NCBI RefSeq assembly: GCF_902652985.1
Contig: NC_047016.1
Coordinates: 39,308,001-39,372,000, forward strand
Direction of reading: 5' to 3'
Length of the DNA stretch: 64,000 nucleotides
Origin: Pecten maximus
Lineage: Eukaryota
A program made the position numbers and the translations under genes. This document shows, one piece after another, positions 1-57,740 of the stretch. How positions within the stretch are numbered: position 1 is the stretch's first letter; every line of letters starts with the position of its first letter. Under the pieces are notes generated by a model. The model did no database searches. It was not told the DNA's origin and saw nothing but the letters and a program-made list of their open reading frames with translations.

Positions 1-1538
1 CTGTAGACAGAGACATCAAACTGTAAATAGAGAGACATCAAACTGTAAATAGAGAGACATCAAACTGTAAATAGAGAGACATCAAACTGTAAACGGAGAG
101 ACATCAAACTGTAAATAGAACTGTAGATGGAGAGACATCAAACTGTAGAGAGAGACATCAAACTGTAGAGAGAGACATCAAACTGTAAATAGAGGACATC
201 AAAACGTAAATAGAGAGACATCAAACTGTAGAGAGAGACATCAAACTGTAGATGTAGAGACATCAAACTGTAAATAGAGAGACATCAAACTGTAAATAGA
301 GAGACATCAAACTGTAGAGAGAGACATCAAACTGTAAATAGAGAGACATCAAACTGTAGAGAGAGACATCAAACTGTAAATGGAGAGATATCAAACTGTA
401 AATGGAGAGACATCAAACTGTAAATAGAGAGACATCAAACTGTAGAGAGAGACATCAAACTGTAAATAGAGAGACATCAAACTGTAAATGGAGAGATATC
501 AAACTGTAGATGTAGAGACATCAAACTGTAAATAGAGAGACATCAAACTGTAGAGAGAGACATCAAACTGTAAATAGAGAGACATCAAACTGTAGAGAGA
601 GACATCAAACTGTAAATGGAGAGATATCAAACTGTAAATGGAGAGACATCAAACTGTAAATAGAGAGACATCAAACTGTAAATAGAGAGACATCAAACTG
701 TAAATAGAGAGACATCAAACTGTAGAGAGAGACATCAAACTGTAAATAGAGAGACATCAAACTGTAGAGAGAGACATCAAACTGTAGAGAGAGACATCAA
801 ACTGTAGAGAGAGACATCAAACTGTAGAGAGAGACATCAAACTGTAGAGAGAGACATCAAACTGTAAATAGAGAGACATCAAATTGTAAATTGAGAGACA
901 TCAAACTGTAAATAGAGAGACATCAAACTTTAAATAGAGAGACATATCAAAATGTAAAAGGAAAATATCAAACTGCAAATGGAGACACATCAAACTTTGA
1001 ATGGAGAGACATCAAAACGTAAATGGAGAGACATCAAACTGTAAATAGAGAGACATCAAATTGTAAATAGAGAGACATCAAACTGTAAATAGAGAGACAT
1101 CAGACTGTAAATAGAGAGACATCAAACTGTAAATAGAGAGACATCAGACTGTAAATAGAGAGACATCAAATTGTAAATAGAGAGACATCAAACTGTAAAT
1201 AGAGAGACATCAAACTGTAAATAGAGAGACATCAAACTGTAGAGAGAGACATCAAACTGTAGAGAGAGACATCAAACTGTAGAGAGAGACATCAAACTGT
1301 AGAGAGAGACATCAAACTGTAAATTGAGAGACATCAAACTGTAAATAGAGAGACATCAAACTGTAGAGAGAGACATCAAACTGTAAATAGAGAGACATCA
1401 AATTGTAAATAGAGAGACATCAAACTGTAAATAGAGAGACATCAAACTGTAAATAGAGAGACATCAAACTGTGAATAGAGAGACATCAAACTTTAAATGG
1501 AGAGACATCAAACATAAAGGGAGAGACACAAAACATAA
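1..1538. repeat. Minisatellite of mixed 22-bp (AGAGAGACATCAAACTGTAAAT) and 20-bp (AGAGAGAGACATCAAACTGT) units, cut by the window start
   Basis: Units read directly; degenerates after about 1490. Confidence 0.97.
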
Positions 1539-3991: not shown

Positions 3992-5157
3992 CACCGACGA
4001 GACCTAGAAGGACGAAACAGCTGTATTGTGTCCCAAGCATCACTGACGAGTCCTAGAAGGACGAAACAGTTGTATTGTGTCCCAAGCATCACTGACGAGT
4101 CCTCGAAGGACGACACAGTTGTATTGTGTCCCAAGCATCACTGACGAGTCCTAGAAGGACGACACAGTTGTATTGTTTCCCAAGCATCACTGAGAAGTCC
4201 TAGAAGGACGAAACAGTTGTATGGTGTGTCCCAAGCATCACTGACAAGTCCTAGATGGAGGAAACAGCTGTATTGTGTCCCTTACATCACTGACGAGTCC
4301 TAGAAGGACGAAACAGCTGTATGGTGTGTCCCAAGCATCACTGACGAGTCCTAGAAGGACGACACAGTTGTATTGTTTCCCAAGCATCACTGAGAAGTCC
4401 TAGAAGGACGAAACAGTTGTATGGTGTGTCCCAAGCATCACTGACAAGTCCTAGATGGAGGAAACAGCTGTATTGTGTCCCTTACATCACTGACGAGTCC
4501 TAGAAGGACGAAACAGCTGTATGGTGTGTCCCAAGCATCACTGACGAGTCCTAGAAGGACGAAACAGCTTTATGATGTCACTAACATCACTGACGAGTCC
4601 TAGAAGGACGAAACAGCTGTATGATGTCACTAACATCACTGACGAGTTCTATAAGGACGATGCAGCTTTATGATGTCCCTATCATCACTGACGAGTCCTA
4701 GGAAAATACAGCTGTATGATGTCACTAACATCACTGTCGAGTCCTAGAAGGACGAAACAGCTGTATGATGTCACCAACATCACTGACGAGTCCTAGAAGG
4801 ACGAAACAGCTTTATGATGTCACTAACATCACTGACGAGTCCTAGAAGGACGAAACAGCTGTATGATGTCACTAACATCACTGACGAGTCCTAGAAGGAC
4901 GAAACAGCTGTATGATGTCACTAACATCAATGACGAGTTCTATAAGGACGATGCAGCTTTATGATGTCACTAACATCACTGACGAGTCCTAGAAGGACGA
5001 AACAGCTTTATGATGTCACTAACATCACTGACGAGTCCTAGAAGGACGAAACAGCTTTATGATGTCACTAACATCACTGACGAGTCCTAGAAGGACGAAA
5101 CAGCTGTATGATGTCACTAACATCAATGACGAGTCCTAGAAGGACGGTACAGCTGTC
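3992..5157 (+). ncRNA. Tandem array of about 24 hammerhead ribozyme units (49-51 bp), array A
   Basis: Consensus CATCA-CTGACGA-GTCC-TAGAA-GGAC-GAAA-CAGCTG-TA-TGATG-TCACTAA contains the CUGANGA and GAAA cores, a 4-bp stem II, a GUA (NUH) triplet and complementary stem I arms. Consensus-intact units have the CTGACGA core at 4290, 4490, 4590, 4832, 4881 and 5077. Confidence 0.92.
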
Positions 5158-8475: not shown

Positions 8476-9200
8476 GCTAATTCATAAACAATATCGAAGT
8501 AACTTGCAACAAACCTAATGCAGCTTGCTAATTTATAAACAACCCTAACGTAAAATCGCAAACAAACCTTATGTAGCTTGCTAATTCACAAACAGCAATA
8601 ACGGTTAACCGCAATCAGTCCTAATGTAACTTGCTAATTTAAAAGCAATGCTAATTTAACGACTTTAAATAAATGAGATTAATTCACAAAATAAAAGCTA
8701 ATGTAGCTCGCTAATTCACAAACACCGCTAATGTAGCTATCTAATTCATAAACACCTCTAATGTAGCTATCTAATTCACAAACACCTCTAATGTAGCTCG
8801 CTGATTCACAAACACCGCTAATGTAGCTCGCTGATTCACAAACACCGCTAACGTAGCTCGCTAATTCACTAATGATGTTACTGTAGCTCACCCATTCACA
8901 AGCAGTGCTAATGTATATCGCTCATTTACAAACAATGCTAATTTAGCTCTCTAATTCACAAACACCGCTAATGTAGCTCGCTGATTCACAAACATTGCTA
9001 ATTTAGCTCTCTAATTCACAAACAATGCTAATTTAGCTCTCTAATTCACAAACAATGCTAATTCAGCTCTCTAATTCACAAACAATGCTAATTTAGCTCT
9101 CTAATTCACAAACAGTGCTAATGTAGCTCACTCATTCACAAGTAATGATAATAACTCGCTAATTCACAAACGTTGTTTATGTAACTTGCTTATTCATGAA
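8476..9200. repeat. 30-bp minisatellite (GCTAATGTAGCTCGCTAATTCACAAACACC)
   Basis: Regular 30-bp period over about 8697-9170 with degenerate flanks; explains ORF 8679-8891. Confidence 0.93.
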
Positions 9201-48638: not shown

Positions 48639-48640
<2 letters not shown>

Positions 48641-48674
<34 letters not shown>

Positions 48675-48709
48675 ACCCCCAACCCCAACCCCCACCCCAC
48701 CACCACCCC
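48641..48709. repeat. Poly-C / C-rich tract
   Basis: Read directly. Confidence 0.9.
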
Positions 48710-52152: not shown

Positions 52153-52343
52153 GTTTGTTTGTCTACTGGTTATATCCCCCCCCCCCCCCCCCCCCCCCCC
52201 CCCTGCGCAGTTCTAGCAGCTTAGAGGCGAGGGTTTATTGTAATATCTAATGGCTTCTTCATTGAACAACATACGGAAGTCCCGTCGCATGCTACCCAGA
52301 GCAATAGCAGTTAAGATGTCTTGCCTAAGGACACATCTACAAC
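52153..52343 (-). mobile_element. CORE-like SINE fragment, second copy, with an internal poly-C tract
   Basis: Reverse complement TGTGTCCTTAGGCAAGACATCTTAA...GCGACGGGACTTCCGTATGTTGTTCAATGAAG aligns by eye with 39761-39838, and ends in CAAACAAAC. Confidence 0.62.
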
Positions 52344-55300: not shown

Positions 55301-56969
55301 AAAGCTTGATTTCCGACAAAGACGGTCATATAACATTATGACTGATTTCTGATTTACAATGTAGTCTTTGTAACAAAAAAAATATCTTATAGAAATCACG
55401 CCAAAAAGATGAATGTTGAAGAGTTGAATACAATGATATGATAAAATAGTTAAATATGAAATGAACTGCTCTTTTTTTCCACTACGCATTTATTTCAAAT
55501 CTTTCAAATTTTGAACTTGATTTATCAAAAAGTCTCGAACAAAATCAACCGTATTAACAAGGGAGGTCATTCTGATATAGACTTCAGGTAAAATATTTCG
55601 TAAAATTTACAAAGAAAGCATTGGAATGTCTGCAGCTATCTATTTGCTGGCGAGGGCTTCCGTACCGACGCCCTGATTTAAGTAGTACTTACTTGCTTTC
55701 CCTAAATCTTCCTTGTCGATAACCATTGAACGACGGCTCATAAACTTCGGCTACCTCCGCCAGGGTTCGGCCGAGGGGAGATAAACCCTGGCCTCATGCA
55801 GAGATAGGCCTTGTTTTCCGTGTCTATGGCCCACTGTTTATAGCCAATTAAGGCCAGTGCTTTGAAACAATTAACGGCGAAAACAACCTACATATTGATT
55901 AGGAAAATGTGAGACAAATTTCCCAGGCTATTGTCTTAAAACATTTACGTGAAACAAAGATAACAACGACAATTCGATCAGTTAAAAATTGTTGCACCTC
56001 TGTAAAGTTGAGTCATATGCTAGGCGTGGCTAACACGGGTTCCCACTGTAGTTTTGCAAGTTTCGTTATGCAAATATAATGTTACGTTATATTGAGAGCT
56101 GTTTTTTTCAAAATCAAAAAGCTTTTGGTCATAGATACAATTTTTAACATCAATGAGATAAAAAAACAAAAACAAAAAACAAAAAAAAACAAAAAAAAAC
56201 CAATAATGTGAAATAATTGATAACTGGAAGGTAATCTTTATTACACAGACTACCCTCCACACAATCGTCGTTAACATGCTCGACTTTTCACCTTTCCGAT
56301 CCTTTCCAGGACTCCTTATACCCAGATCAAATTGCCTAATTATTATATTTAATATTATATGTAAATTTTATGCTATTAATGACAAGGCGCAATTGGCATA
56401 GTCTGTGTTAGCTTTCGCTAGGCCCTTATGCAGTTCAACCAAGTTTGCGATACTTAACGAAAGCCTAATGAAACAATGGCAAACGTAATGTAAAGAGCAG
56501 CGACCAAAATATAGATATTAGAATTTCGGTTTTTCTCATTGTCATGGTAGAAGCCAGTATGACCCCTTTCTTGATTCTGAGGGACCCCATATGAGTCAAG
56601 CACGAACGACCTTAATTTGCTGATGTTTTTTTAGTTGTACTTTTTCAGTTTTACAACTTTCCTTTCATAAGCAGCGTACGCAGTGACACTATACCCAGAA
56701 ACATGTGCTTGTATGTCCTATTGAACTTGCTGTAACCATGCGTCGCATCATGTTAGCATCTTTTCTGTGTGTACCTGTAATTATATTTATAGATGTGAAG
56801 GTTTTCCTGTCTTCGCTATTTTAGTTTGCTAATTAACTTCCGTTTCCAAACTGACTTGTATCAATCAAATGACCTTATAACTAATCTTCACAGTACCCTA
56901 ATATTTTGACATTTCCTTAGACCTATTTCGAATCATTGTTCGCCACCTTTGATAAATTAAGACCTTCAG

Positions 56970-57354
56970 CATCACTGACGAGTCTTAGAAGGACAAAACA
57001 GCTGTATGATGTCTCTAACATCACTGACGAGTCTTAGAAGGACAAAACAGCTGTATGATGTCTCTAACATCACTGACGAGTCTTAGAAGGACAAAACAGC
57101 TGTATGATGTCTCTAACATCACTGACGAGTCTTAGAAGGACAAAACAGCTGTATGATGTCACTAACATCACTGACGAGTCTTAGAAGGACAAAACAGCTG
57201 TATGATGTCACTAACATCACTGACGAGTCTTAGAAGGACAAAACAGCTGTATGATGTCACTAACATCACTGACGAGTCTTAGAAGGACAAAACAGCTGTA
57301 TGATGTCTCTAACATCACTGACGAGTCTTAGAAGGACAAAACAGCTGTATGATG
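56970..57354 (+). ncRNA. Homogeneous array of 8 hammerhead-derived 49-bp units, array C, predicted inactive
   Basis: CTGACGA cores at 56975, 57024, 57073, 57122, 57171, 57220, 57269 and 57318. Every unit reads GTCT-TAGAA-GGAC-AAAA-CAGCTG-TA (GAAA changed to AAAA). Confidence 0.92.
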
Positions 57355-57740
57355 CAGTATAATTCATTTTGGCTCTACTACATCGAACTCACAATTTGTT
57401 TTGAAAGTTGATCAAATCTTGTATATCTTTTGTACAGTCCTAAGAGGCTATGTCAGCCTACATATATCACGGGTCTTTTCCCATTTGAGCATATTTGATA
57501 TACACAAGAAAAGCCTGAATGTTTCGAAACAAGGATTTCTTTAATTTTGCCAACGGCGATCTTAAGCTTACGTTTGACGTATATTAGTAGATACTACCTA
57601 CGTTGTCTTGTTATCTAAGTGGTTTATTGGCGAATGCATTCCCGGAGAGAATTTATTTCAGCCTTTTCTACATTGCTGCCTCTCTCACGGTAAAATGCTA
57701 TGATCTAATATTTAGTCAAATTTTGAATTTTACATTTCAG

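What the first reader, a model, noticed from the sequence alone, without database searches (positions are those of the whole stretch)
3992..5157. A satellite whose 49-bp unit is a complete hammerhead ribozyme: candidate ultra-minimal retrozyme
Seen: about 24 head-to-tail units of CATCA CTGACGA GTCC TAGAA GGAC GAAA CAGCTG TA TGATG TCACTAA. Every base maps to hammerhead core, stem or loop, with no cargo. Established: CUGANGA + GAAA + NUH is the hammerhead core; tandem hammerheads occur in newt satellite 2, schistosome Sm-alpha, Penelope-like elements and animal non-LTR retrozymes, whose monomers as I recall are well over 100 nt. Inference: a + strand transcript would self-cleave after each GUA into 49-nt monomers (UGAUGUCACUAACAUCACUGACGAGUCCUAGAAGGACGAAACAGCUGUA) with 5'-OH and 2',3'-cyclic phosphate ends. 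An RtcB-type ligase could circularise these, and a reverse transcriptase acting in trans could copy them into multimers. I cannot confirm novelty without a search.
Basis: partly seen in the sequence, partly recalled or inferred. Interest (0 to 1): 0.93.

Follow-up and report, generated by a model that had tools for sequence, protein, structure and literature searches.

The report
Hammerhead-ribozyme minisatellite in king scallop
A 1.2-kb stretch of the king scallop genome is made of about 24 head-to-tail copies of a 49-base self-cleaving "hammerhead" RNA motif; it grew by ordinary DNA duplication of the ribozyme part of an older ~390-base mobile element and shows no sign of being a new kind of self-replicating mini-element.

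Summary
Window 3992-5156 holds 23.7 units of 49 bp, and each unit is a type I hammerhead (Rfam RF00163). Six units pass the curated cut-off and about 11 keep an intact core. The genome is Pecten maximus; the assembly size matches the published one exactly.

The "ultra-minimal retrozyme" reading is only partly supported.
- The 49-bp unit equals positions ~208-257 of a ~340-bp dispersed element with more than 1,000 candidate copies. That element has a constant 3' end and variable 5' truncation, and some copies are head-to-tail with a unit of ~390 bp. It is the size of the mussel retrozyme.
- At most other loci the arrays sit inside this parent and run into its 3' tail.
- Arrays grow as DNA. A four-unit 200-bp block is duplicated at 100% identity, dead units included. 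Other arrays are uniform for inactivating changes (G12A; GUG at the cleavage site).
- A single unit is not predicted to fold as a hammerhead. Two adjacent units fold as the classic double hammerhead through the ACAGCUGU palindrome.

No data here show cleavage, 49-nt RNAs or circles. A 2026 preprint already lists retrozyme units down to 51 bp. The scan flagged this family 26 times in this genome. Verdict: a real new variant of a known kind, of moderate interest.

The parts
3992..5156 (+). The finding: 49-bp tandem array, 23.7 units, each a type I hammerhead plus a 5-nt linker. Degenerate unit remnants probably extend to ~3945 and ~5192.
   Evidence: TRF; unit dissection; Rfam; profile hits to parent positions 208-257 only.
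3992..4534 (+). Left variant block (linker CCCAA, helix I GCAUCA/UUGUGU or UGGUGU). Most cores are broken (GACA, CUGAGAA, CUGACAA).
   Evidence: within-block identity 0.855, between blocks 0.786.
4139..4534 (+). Perfect duplication of a 200-bp four-unit block (4139-4334 = 4339-4534, 100% identical), including catalytically dead units.
   Evidence: Offset analysis.
4535..5156 (+). Right variant block (linker CACUA, helix I ACAUCA/UGAUGU) with a five-unit (245-bp) higher-order periodicity at 97-98% identity. It holds most of the intact units.
4826..4923 (+). The only adjacent unit pair whose minimum-free-energy fold is a complete double hammerhead (28 of 28 pairs). Predicted cleavage sites lie after A4863 and A4912.
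   Evidence: MFE -29.1 kcal/mol, centroid identical, z = -3.04 against 200 dinucleotide shuffles.
16130..16303 (-). Second, older array of about 3 units in the opposite orientation.
   Evidence: TRF; Rfam 29.3 bits at 16235-16278; profile hits.
16068..16109 (-). Remnant of the parent element's 3' tail end, downstream of array 2.
   Evidence: Local alignment to the tail consensus, z = 5.7, 0 of 500 shuffles as good.
56903..56969 (+). 5'-truncated head of the parent element (profile positions from 143), continuous with the first unit of array 3.
   Evidence: nhmmer hit 143-257, E 1e-23.
56970..57354 (+). Third array: 8 units, 99% identical, all carrying GAAA->AAAA (G12A, the catalytic general base) and a U.G pair in helix II.
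   Evidence: TRF; Rfam only 22-25.5 bits.
57355..57441 (+). 3' tail of the parent element (profile positions 258-344), following the last unit of array 3.
   Evidence: nhmmer 208-344, E 3.4e-36; the tail is conserved at more than 130 candidate loci; alignment z = 26.

Best explanation
The array is a minisatellite born from a mobile element. The king scallop genome carries an old family of short, non-coding, hammerhead-bearing retroposons. The modelled element is ~340 bp and the head-to-tail unit is ~390 bp. It consists of a head, one type I hammerhead and a ~90-nt 3' tail, and it is the scallop counterpart of the mussel and coral non-LTR retrozymes.

In one lineage of this family the 49-bp segment that is the hammerhead domain (positions ~208-257, closed by helix I) became tandemly duplicated. 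Array-bearing copies were then spread over all chromosomes. The arrays have since expanded, contracted and homogenised as DNA, by unequal crossing-over or replication slippage in blocks of one to five units, whether or not the ribozyme still works. The finding's array is one such array that has lost its parent flanks or never had them.

If the + strand is transcribed, the few intact neighbouring units should pair through the 8-nt palindrome ACAGCUGU into a double hammerhead. That fold would cut after each GUA and release 49-nt pieces.

Shown: the hammerhead identity, the parent element and its anatomy, the DNA-level block duplications, the dead homogenised arrays and the predicted dimer fold.

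Inferred: retrotransposition of the parent, a single origin of the arrays, and any cleavage in vivo.
For: Hammerhead identity: Rfam RF00163 is above the cut-off. 86% of stem cells pair in 132 distinct array units, against 18-48% for slid controls, and most stem changes preserve wobble pairing.

Parent element: the tail is conserved at more than 130 loci. A whole-element query gives 1,029 first-look candidates at 73-84% identity. In the profile, solo copies end at positions 343-349 and start anywhere from 4 to 241. About 4 of 13 near-full-length copies have another tail end 27-49 nt upstream (L067 z = 20.7, L069 z = 13.6, L080 z = 3.6, and L030 by nhmmer).

Arrays inside the parent: every array repeats positions 207/208-257. 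The last unit runs into the tail in L001, L002, L008, L009, L011, L012, L016, L025 and window array 3. The heads are truncated at different points, from 103 to 196.

DNA-level growth: a 200-bp block is 100% identical and includes dead units, and there is a 245-bp higher-order repeat at 97-98%. Array 3 is 99% uniform for G12A. The L006 array is uniform for GUG. Mean identity is 0.81 within arrays and 0.77 between them, and reaches 0.96 in two arrays.

Neutral decay: only 50 of 156 array units and 12 of 51 solo units keep the core. 63 of 278 core substitutions are G->A at the two CpG sites.

Dimer requirement: the lone motif prefers a non-hammerhead fold (-11.9 versus -6.1 kcal/mol). The dimer's MFE and centroid are the double hammerhead (-29.1, z = -3.0).

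Literature: mussel retrozyme repeats are 350-390 bp (PMC7229834). The model of terminal PLE sequence followed by local tandem amplification through unequal crossover comes from bioRxiv 10.64898/2026.07.22.740005.
Against: The finding's own array has no detectable parent head or tail (z 0.2-0.3), so its origin from an array-bearing parent copy rests on analogy with other loci. At least three further arrays (L006, L007 and the L010 pair) also lack a tail. No target-site duplications were found around 30 solo copies, so retrotransposition rests only on the 5'-truncation pattern. No autonomous partner was identified: 30 Penelope-like endonuclease loci carry no such motif within 1.5 kb. The 493 perfectly conserved 32-mers, and the better preservation of hammerheads in arrays than in solo copies, could mean that something keeps array ribozymes intact. 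Contigs of RNA libraries contain the family, so an RNA-level life cycle is not excluded.
Confidence: 0.7

Rival explanations
1. The reader's model, an autonomous 'ultra-minimal retrozyme'. Array transcripts self-cleave into 49-nt monomers, a tRNA-type ligase circularises them, and a reverse transcriptase acting in trans rolls around the circle. The multimeric cDNA then integrates as a new flank-less array.
For: This array and a few others have no parent flanks. The array's 3' edge falls within 1 nt of the cleavage site, at the end of ACAGCTGT. 493 perfect core copies exist. The family is present in RNA-library contigs. A two-unit RNA is predicted to fold into an active double hammerhead. Larger animal retrozymes are known to form circles (PMC7229834).
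Against: Most arrays are joined to the parent tail at a fixed 3' end. The repeat junction (257->208) is 5 nt off the cleavage site. Growth is by 4- and 5-unit DNA blocks that include dead units. Arrays are uniform for G12A or GUG, and such arrays cannot have been made by cleavage-dependent copying. The array's 5' edge is degenerate and not in cleavage register. No solo copy starts at the cleavage site. A 49-nt circle is predicted to be weakly structured (-6.9 kcal/mol). No natural ribozyme circle this small appears in the papers read here, where animal retrozyme circles are ~170-400 nt.
Confidence: 0.08
2. Reverse-transcriptase slippage. Arrays are created and lengthened while the parent RNA is being copied. 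When the enzyme reaches the 5' side of helix I, it jumps across the base of the stem back to the 3' side and copies the hammerhead domain again. Array-bearing cDNAs then insert with the normal tail.
For: The repeated segment (208-257) is almost exactly the domain closed by helix I (216-258). Arrays carry the tail and variably truncated heads, as expected if the array was already in the template or in the cDNA. The L010 inverted arrays switch strand exactly at the ACAGCTGT palindrome, a site of inter-unit pairing.
Against: All arrays share the same derived junction (T44, a 1-nt deletion, and A1 instead of G1). This points to one founding event, not recurrent jumps. The perfect multi-unit block duplications inside an inserted array need a DNA-level process anyway. 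There is no direct test.
Confidence: 0.15
3. The array is a host-exploited element, for example a transcript-processing or small-RNA-producing locus kept by selection on the scallop.
For: The core and stems are well preserved in many units. The family appears in RNA libraries.
Against: Two thirds of units are dead. Arrays differ freely in length, orientation and place. There is no conserved position relative to any gene, and ten nearby ORFs had no Pfam match. The unique flanks are not covered by the RNA contigs.
Confidence: 0.04

Closest known systems
Animal non-LTR retrozymes (Cervera & de la Pena 2020, PMC7229834): tandem repeats with one canonical type I hammerhead per unit in coral, mussel and axolotl
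   Same: Head-to-tail repeats in an invertebrate genome. The hammerhead has the same 'canonical metazoan' architecture (helix I 6 bp, helix II 4 bp, helix III 2 bp capped by a palindromic tetraloop) and is expected to act as a dimer. The parent element found here (~390-bp unit, partial head-to-tail copies) matches the mussel repeat size of 350-390 bp.
   Different: The repeating unit is 49 bp, not 150-450 bp, and has no self-paired 'cargo'. The arrays are nested inside a larger element and grow by DNA block duplication. No linear or circular RNA has been shown.
Short retrozyme families in vertebrates (Li, Clavereau & Pollet 2026, bioRxiv 10.64898/2026.07.22.740005)
   Same: A computational survey reports non-LTR retrozyme family consensus lengths from 51 to 972 bp. 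It proposes an origin from terminal sequences of Penelope-like elements, followed by local amplification through unequal crossover. This is the model the present data fit.
   Different: That work covers vertebrates plus four invertebrates (three insects and a coral) and no mollusc. The 51-bp families are not described individually in the text I could read. No nested parent element or dead homogenised arrays are reported there.
Newt satellite 2 and the double-hammerhead mechanism (Epstein & Gall 1987; Forster et al. 1988, as cited in PMC4209133 and PMC7229834)
   Same: Satellite DNA whose transcripts carry a hammerhead with a weak helix III, which becomes active when two copies pair through an extended helix III.
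   Different: The newt unit is ~330 bp with one ribozyme. Here adjacent 49-nt units supply both halves, and the 5-nt linker closes helix I as a hairpin.
Minimal hammerheads in the terminal repeats of Penelope-like elements (Cervera & de la Pena 2014, PMC4209133)
   Same: Hammerheads tied to retroelements, massively dispersed, mostly decayed, dimer-acting, with a palindromic 15.2-16.2/loop 3.
   Different: Those motifs have a long helix II (6-8 bp), a short helix I (4-5 bp) and little or no helix III. Here the motif is the canonical type, and no Penelope-like copy examined carries it.
Sm-alpha of Schistosoma mansoni (SINE-like ~335-bp repeat with a type I hammerhead; Ferbeyre et al. 1998, cited in PMC4209133)
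   Same: A short non-coding dispersed element of similar size with one internal type I hammerhead, like the parent element here.
   Different: No internal amplification of the ribozyme module into 49-bp arrays is described for Sm-alpha. Whether the scallop parent has a pol III promoter was not tested.

Membership tests
Type I hammerhead ribozyme (Rfam RF00163) | Conserved core CUGANGA ... GAAA and a cleavable NUH triplet | tested here: met
   About 11 of 23 units in 3992-5156 have CUGANGA + GAAA + GUA/UUA. Genome-wide there are 493 exact copies of the 32-mer from the core to GUA.
Type I hammerhead ribozyme (Rfam RF00163) | Three helices around the core with helix I open, scored by the covariance model at or above the gathering score (34 bits) | tested here: met
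   Six units score 35.0-35.8 bits. 86% of stem cells are paired across 132 distinct array units, against 18-48% for slid controls.
Type I hammerhead ribozyme (Rfam RF00163) | Mg-dependent self-cleavage at the predicted site | not testable with these tools
   Only predicted folds are available. The monomer disfavours the active fold and the dimer favours it.
Animal non-LTR retrozyme | Head-to-tail genomic repeats, each unit carrying a type I hammerhead | tested here: met
   The same holds at many other loci.
Animal non-LTR retrozyme | Unit of about 150-450 bp whose non-ribozyme part forms a highly self-paired RNA | tested here: not met
   The unit is 49 bp with only a 5-nt linker. The parent element (~390-bp unit) would meet it.
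Animal non-LTR retrozyme | Expressed and processed into unit-length linear and circular RNAs | tested here: inconclusive
   Contigs from an RNA-Seq run (X8) and from two runs guessed to be RNA (X2, X3) contain family members, but contigs show neither ends nor circles. No raw reads were available.
Animal non-LTR retrozyme | Spread by a reverse transcriptase supplied in trans (a Penelope-like element is proposed) | tested here: inconclusive
   The parent shows a constant 3' end and variable 5' truncation, but no target-site duplications and no partner element. Further fetching was blocked.
Penelope-like element terminal repeat with a minimal hammerhead | Motif lies in the direct repeats flanking an RT plus GIY-YIG open reading frame | tested here: not met
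   No RT or endonuclease ORF is near any of the three window arrays, and the only ORFs of at least 150 aa lie in other tandem repeats. 30 genomic GIY-YIG loci (+-1.5 kb) carry no hammerhead, head or tail.
Penelope-like element terminal repeat with a minimal hammerhead | Minimal architecture: helix II 6-8 bp, helix I 4-5 bp, helix III absent or 1 bp | tested here: not met
   Here helix II is 4 bp, helix I is 6 bp and helix III is 2 bp plus a tetraloop. The description comes from PMC4209133.
Minisatellite / satellite DNA evolving by unequal exchange | Higher-order multi-unit periodicity and local homogenisation independent of any function of the unit | tested here: met
   A 200-bp block at 100% identity and a 245-bp periodicity at 97-98%. 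Arrays are uniform for dead variants. Identity is 0.81 within arrays and 0.77 between them.

The most novel reading that the evidence does not exclude
Intact stretches of these arrays are transcribed and cut themselves, through double hammerheads formed by neighbouring units, into 49-nt RNAs. These RNAs accumulate in scallop cells as linear molecules and perhaps as circles. That would make them the smallest natural ribozyme-derived RNAs known, about a quarter the size of the smallest retrozyme circles reported (~170 nt). It would also give a natural system in which a hammerhead with no cargo at all is the whole product. A further step, in which such circles are copied back into DNA, is much less likely.
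Probability: 0.15. Interest if true: 0.8.

Novelty: new variant of a known kind. Interest (0 to 1): 0.42.

Why it matters
Hammerhead-bearing repeats are widespread in animals, and how they arise and spread is still debated. This locus and its relatives show one route in detail. The ribozyme module alone, stripped of all other sequence, is amplified inside an older retrozyme-like element, and the arrays then behave as ordinary minisatellites whether or not they are catalytically alive. That supports the view that tandem hammerhead repeats can be satellite DNA born from mobile-element ends, and that they need not be products of a circular-RNA life cycle.

The locus also offers a compact natural test case for the double-hammerhead mechanism: adjacent 49-nt units, an 8-bp palindromic helix III, and natural G12A and GUG arrays as built-in negative controls. 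For annotation, the family (at least 493 perfect cores and more than 1,000 candidate parent copies) is probably counted under the 'unclassified' repeat class of the Pecten maximus genome, 16.7% of the assembly in that paper's Table 4 (PMC7191990). It will trigger ribozyme hits all over the assembly.

Tried and rejected
1. Parent head or tail beside the finding's array. A relaxed nhmmer search and local alignment against shuffles found nothing. My by-eye resemblance was not significant, so I dropped it.
2. Target-site duplications around 30 solo copies. The longest shared word averaged 5.0, against 5.1 in mismatched controls. The copies are ~25% diverged and the profile boundaries are imprecise, so the test is weak.
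3. Link to Penelope-like elements. 150 GIY-YIG hits exist, several in 700-930-aa open frames. The 30 loci held carry no hammerhead, head or tail.
4. RNA evidence. Only assembled contigs were on offer. They show the family in RNA libraries, but no ends, strand or circles.
5. Gene context. Ten ORFs of 95-140 aa had no Pfam match, so I could not confirm or refute that the arrays are intronic.
6. Array edges in cleavage-site register. The 3' edge fits within 1 nt, but the 5' edge dissolves into degenerate units, so no claim is made.
7. Literature searches for hammerhead with bivalve satellite DNA, Pecten, scallop, or satellitome with scallop found no prior description. Subscription-only papers are not covered.
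8. Rfam on solo parent copies gave no hit at E <= 0.01. They are too decayed, so the parent's hammerhead is inferred from the profile alignment.
Full report
WHAT IS THERE

Window 3992-5156 is a head-to-tail array of 23.7 units of 49 bp with 89% matches. Read unit by unit, each unit consists of the following parts:
- ACAUCA, the 5' strand of helix I
- CUGACGA
- GUCC-UAGAA-GGAC, helix II
- GAAA
- C-AGCU-G, helix III of 2 bp counting A15.1-U16.1, with a tetraloop
- UA, with cleavage expected after this A
- UGAUGU, the 3' strand of helix I
- a 5-nt linker, CACUA

Rfam's type I hammerhead model (RF00163) matches six units above its curated cut-off (35.0-35.8 bits against 34) and another eight or so just below it.

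It needs two qualifications. First, only about 11 of 23 units keep both core boxes. The rest carry GACA, GAUG or GGUA in place of GAAA, or CUGAGAA, CUGACAA, CUGUCGA or AUGACGA in place of CUGANGA. Second, the array is a composite of two variant blocks, 3992-4534 and 4535-5156. These are 86% alike within a block and 79% alike between blocks.

The window holds two more arrays of the same family. One is an old three-unit array on the minus strand (16130-16303). The other is an eight-unit array (56970-57354) that is 99% uniform, and every unit of it has AAAA instead of GAAA, that is G12A at the catalytic general base.

WHOSE GENOME

The assembly has 918,306,378 bp in 3,983 contigs. These are exactly the figures published for the king scallop Pecten maximus (PMC7191990). 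That paper mentions neither Penelope-like elements nor satellites nor hammerheads.

THE FAMILY IN THE GENOME

The Rfam model gave about 120,000 first-look candidates, and scored hits lie on many chromosomes. The exact 32-mer from CUGACGA to GUA occurs 493 times, against 0 for the reversed control, often at 49-bp spacing. Arrays of 3 to 26 units were seen at every locus fetched. The scan itself has flagged such arrays 26 times in this genome.

THE ARRAYS ARE NOT FREE-STANDING

The flanks of several arrays share sequence. The first ~87 bp downstream of array 3 recur at more than 130 candidate loci. At most of those loci the recurring sequence follows a single hammerhead, not an array.

Aligning full-length copies defined a parent element of about 340 bp. 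It has a head (profile positions 1-215), one type I hammerhead (216-258, cleavage after 252) and a 3' tail (259-348). A whole-element query gives 1,029 first-look candidates at 73-84% identity, so the family is old.

Across about 70 loci:
- Solo copies end at a constant position (343-349) but start anywhere from position 4 to 241. This is the pattern left by target-primed reverse transcription.
- Every array repeats the same segment, positions 207/208 to 257.
- In nine arrays the last unit continues into the tail.
- Where a head is present, it is truncated at a different point in each copy (103 to 196).

About 4 of 13 near-full-length copies are preceded, 27-49 nt upstream, by the 3' end of another tail (L067 z = 20.7, L069 z = 13.6, L080 z = 3.6, and L030 by nhmmer). 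These are 'more than one unit' head-to-tail copies of a unit of ~390 bp. That is the size of the mussel retrozyme repeats (350-390 bp; PMC7229834).

All arrays share the same derived junction: T at position 44, a one-base deletion in the linker, and A1 instead of the parent's G1, which turns G1-C44 into A1-U44. A single founding duplication, followed by dispersal of array-bearing copies, is therefore the economical reading.

HOW THE ARRAYS GROW

Inside the finding's array, 4139-4334 is 100% identical to 4339-4534. This is a four-unit block that includes units with broken cores. The right half has a five-unit (245-bp) periodicity at 97-98% identity.

Array 3 is uniform for G12A. The L006 array is uniform for GUG at the cleavage triplet, which a hammerhead cannot cut. 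Mean identity is 0.81 within arrays and 0.77 between them, and reaches 0.96 in two arrays.

Only 32% of array units and 24% of solo copies keep an intact core. Nearly a quarter of all core substitutions are G->A at the two CpG dinucleotides that happen to hold G8 and G12, which is the signature of unselected methyl-CpG decay.

All of this is ordinary minisatellite behaviour at the DNA level, and it does not depend on catalysis. In L010, two arrays in opposite orientation meet exactly at the ACAGCTGT palindrome.

HOW THE RNA WOULD WORK

The motif fits the published description of the canonical metazoan type I hammerhead: helix I of 6 bp, helix II of 4 bp, and helix III of 1-2 bp capped by a small palindromic loop. 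Such motifs are poor as monomers and active as dimers (PMC4209133).

Folding agrees with this. The lone 44-nt motif prefers a different fold (-11.9 kcal/mol, against -6.1 for the hammerhead fold). The two-unit RNA 4826-4923 has a double hammerhead as both its minimum-energy and its centroid structure (-29.1 kcal/mol, z = -3.04). In that structure:
- the two ACAGCUGU palindromes pair into an 8-bp helix III;
- UGAUGU of unit n and ACAUCA of unit n+1 form helix I as a hairpin closed by the 5-nt linker;
- the outer strands close the second helix I.

Only this unit pair gives all 28 pairs in the minimum-energy fold. Neighbouring pairs give 12-25. Stem pairing is well kept across the family (86% of cells, against 18-48% for slid controls), mostly through wobble-preserving transitions.

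So if the + strand is transcribed, a handful of sites in this array could cut and release 49-nt pieces. Nothing here shows that they do.

RNA DATA

All runs on offer were assembled contigs. X8 is a recorded RNA-Seq run, and X2 and X3 are guessed to be RNA. Their contigs contain array units and solo head-hammerhead-tail copies, while the unique flanks of this locus are uncovered. The family is therefore represented in RNA libraries, possibly only inside longer host transcripts. Contigs cannot show ends, strand or circles.

The finding's own array has no detectable parent head or tail (z 0.2-0.3, where the positive control gives 26). Its 3' edge lies within 1 nt of the cleavage site. At least three further arrays (L006, L007 and the L010 pair) also lack a tail. 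Arrays preserve hammerheads better than solo copies do.

Against it:
- most arrays have a tail;
- the repeat junction is 5 nt off the cleavage site;
- growth is in DNA blocks;
- dead arrays are uniform;
- the 5' edge of this array is degenerate;
- no copy starts at the cleavage site.

I put the full circle-and-reverse-transcription cycle at under 10%. The weaker claim that 49-nt RNAs accumulate in vivo I put at about 15%.

COMPARISON WITH WHAT IS KNOWN

Peer-reviewed work places animal retrozyme units at 150-450 bp (PMC7229834). A 2026 preprint that surveyed vertebrates reports family consensus lengths from 51 to 972 bp. It argues that retrozymes derive from the ends of Penelope-like elements and then amplify locally by unequal crossover. 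The scallop family fits that model and adds detail for a mollusc:
- a cargo-free unit;
- its nesting inside a recognisable ~390-bp parent;
- natural dead arrays.

It is not the minimal hammerhead of Penelope-like terminal repeats, because the helix lengths differ and no Penelope-like copy examined carries it. No paper in the searchable library describes hammerheads in scallops or bivalve satellites.

VERDICT

The feature is real and correctly described. It is best filed as a new variant of a known kind: a hammerhead-only minisatellite derived from a retrozyme-like retroposon. Interest is moderate. It is a neat natural system for the double hammerhead and for the birth of satellites from mobile elements, but it is not a new class of element on present evidence.

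LIMITS

- No autonomous partner was found, and further genome fetching was blocked.
- No target-site duplications were detected.
- Genome-wide proportions rest on about 70 sampled loci.
- There are no raw RNA reads.

Noticed in passing
window 9-1532; 8680-9196; 26796-27884; 30952-31641; 38401-38654: The window is unusually rich in other, unrelated minisatellites: 22 bp x 70, 30 bp x 17, 31 bp x 35 (which creates a spurious 379-aa ORF), 32/65 bp x 10-16, and 42 bp x 6 at 96% identity.
   Followed up: no
L010:890-1610: Two hammerhead arrays in opposite orientation abut, and the strand switch falls exactly on the ACAGCTGT palindrome of helix III. This suggests fold-back or template switching at that site.
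   Followed up: partly
L006 (minus strand, ~1249-1565): An eight-unit array in which every unit has GUG instead of GUA at the cleavage triplet (uncleavable) while the rest of the core is intact. It is a second example of an array homogenised for a dead variant.
   Followed up: partly
G000, about 150 places (e.g. L037, L047): The genome holds many Penelope-like elements: GIY-YIG hits, several in open frames of 700-930 aa. None of the 30 loci held has a hammerhead within 1.5 kb, which fits the hammerhead-less Naiad type said to dominate bivalves (PMC8557442).
   Followed up: partly
window 4709-4763 and 4018-4072: Rfam's type III hammerhead model also scores (38 and 34 bits, below its cut-off of 48.5) across unit junctions. 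This is a consequence of the circular permutation that a tandem array allows.
   Followed up: no
L017:2324-2405: A hairpin scores as mir-33-like on both strands (34-37 bits, below the cut-off of 50). It is probably just a palindrome.
   Followed up: no
window 48640-48709; 52176-52203: Long poly-C tracts (69 and 28 bases).
   Followed up: no
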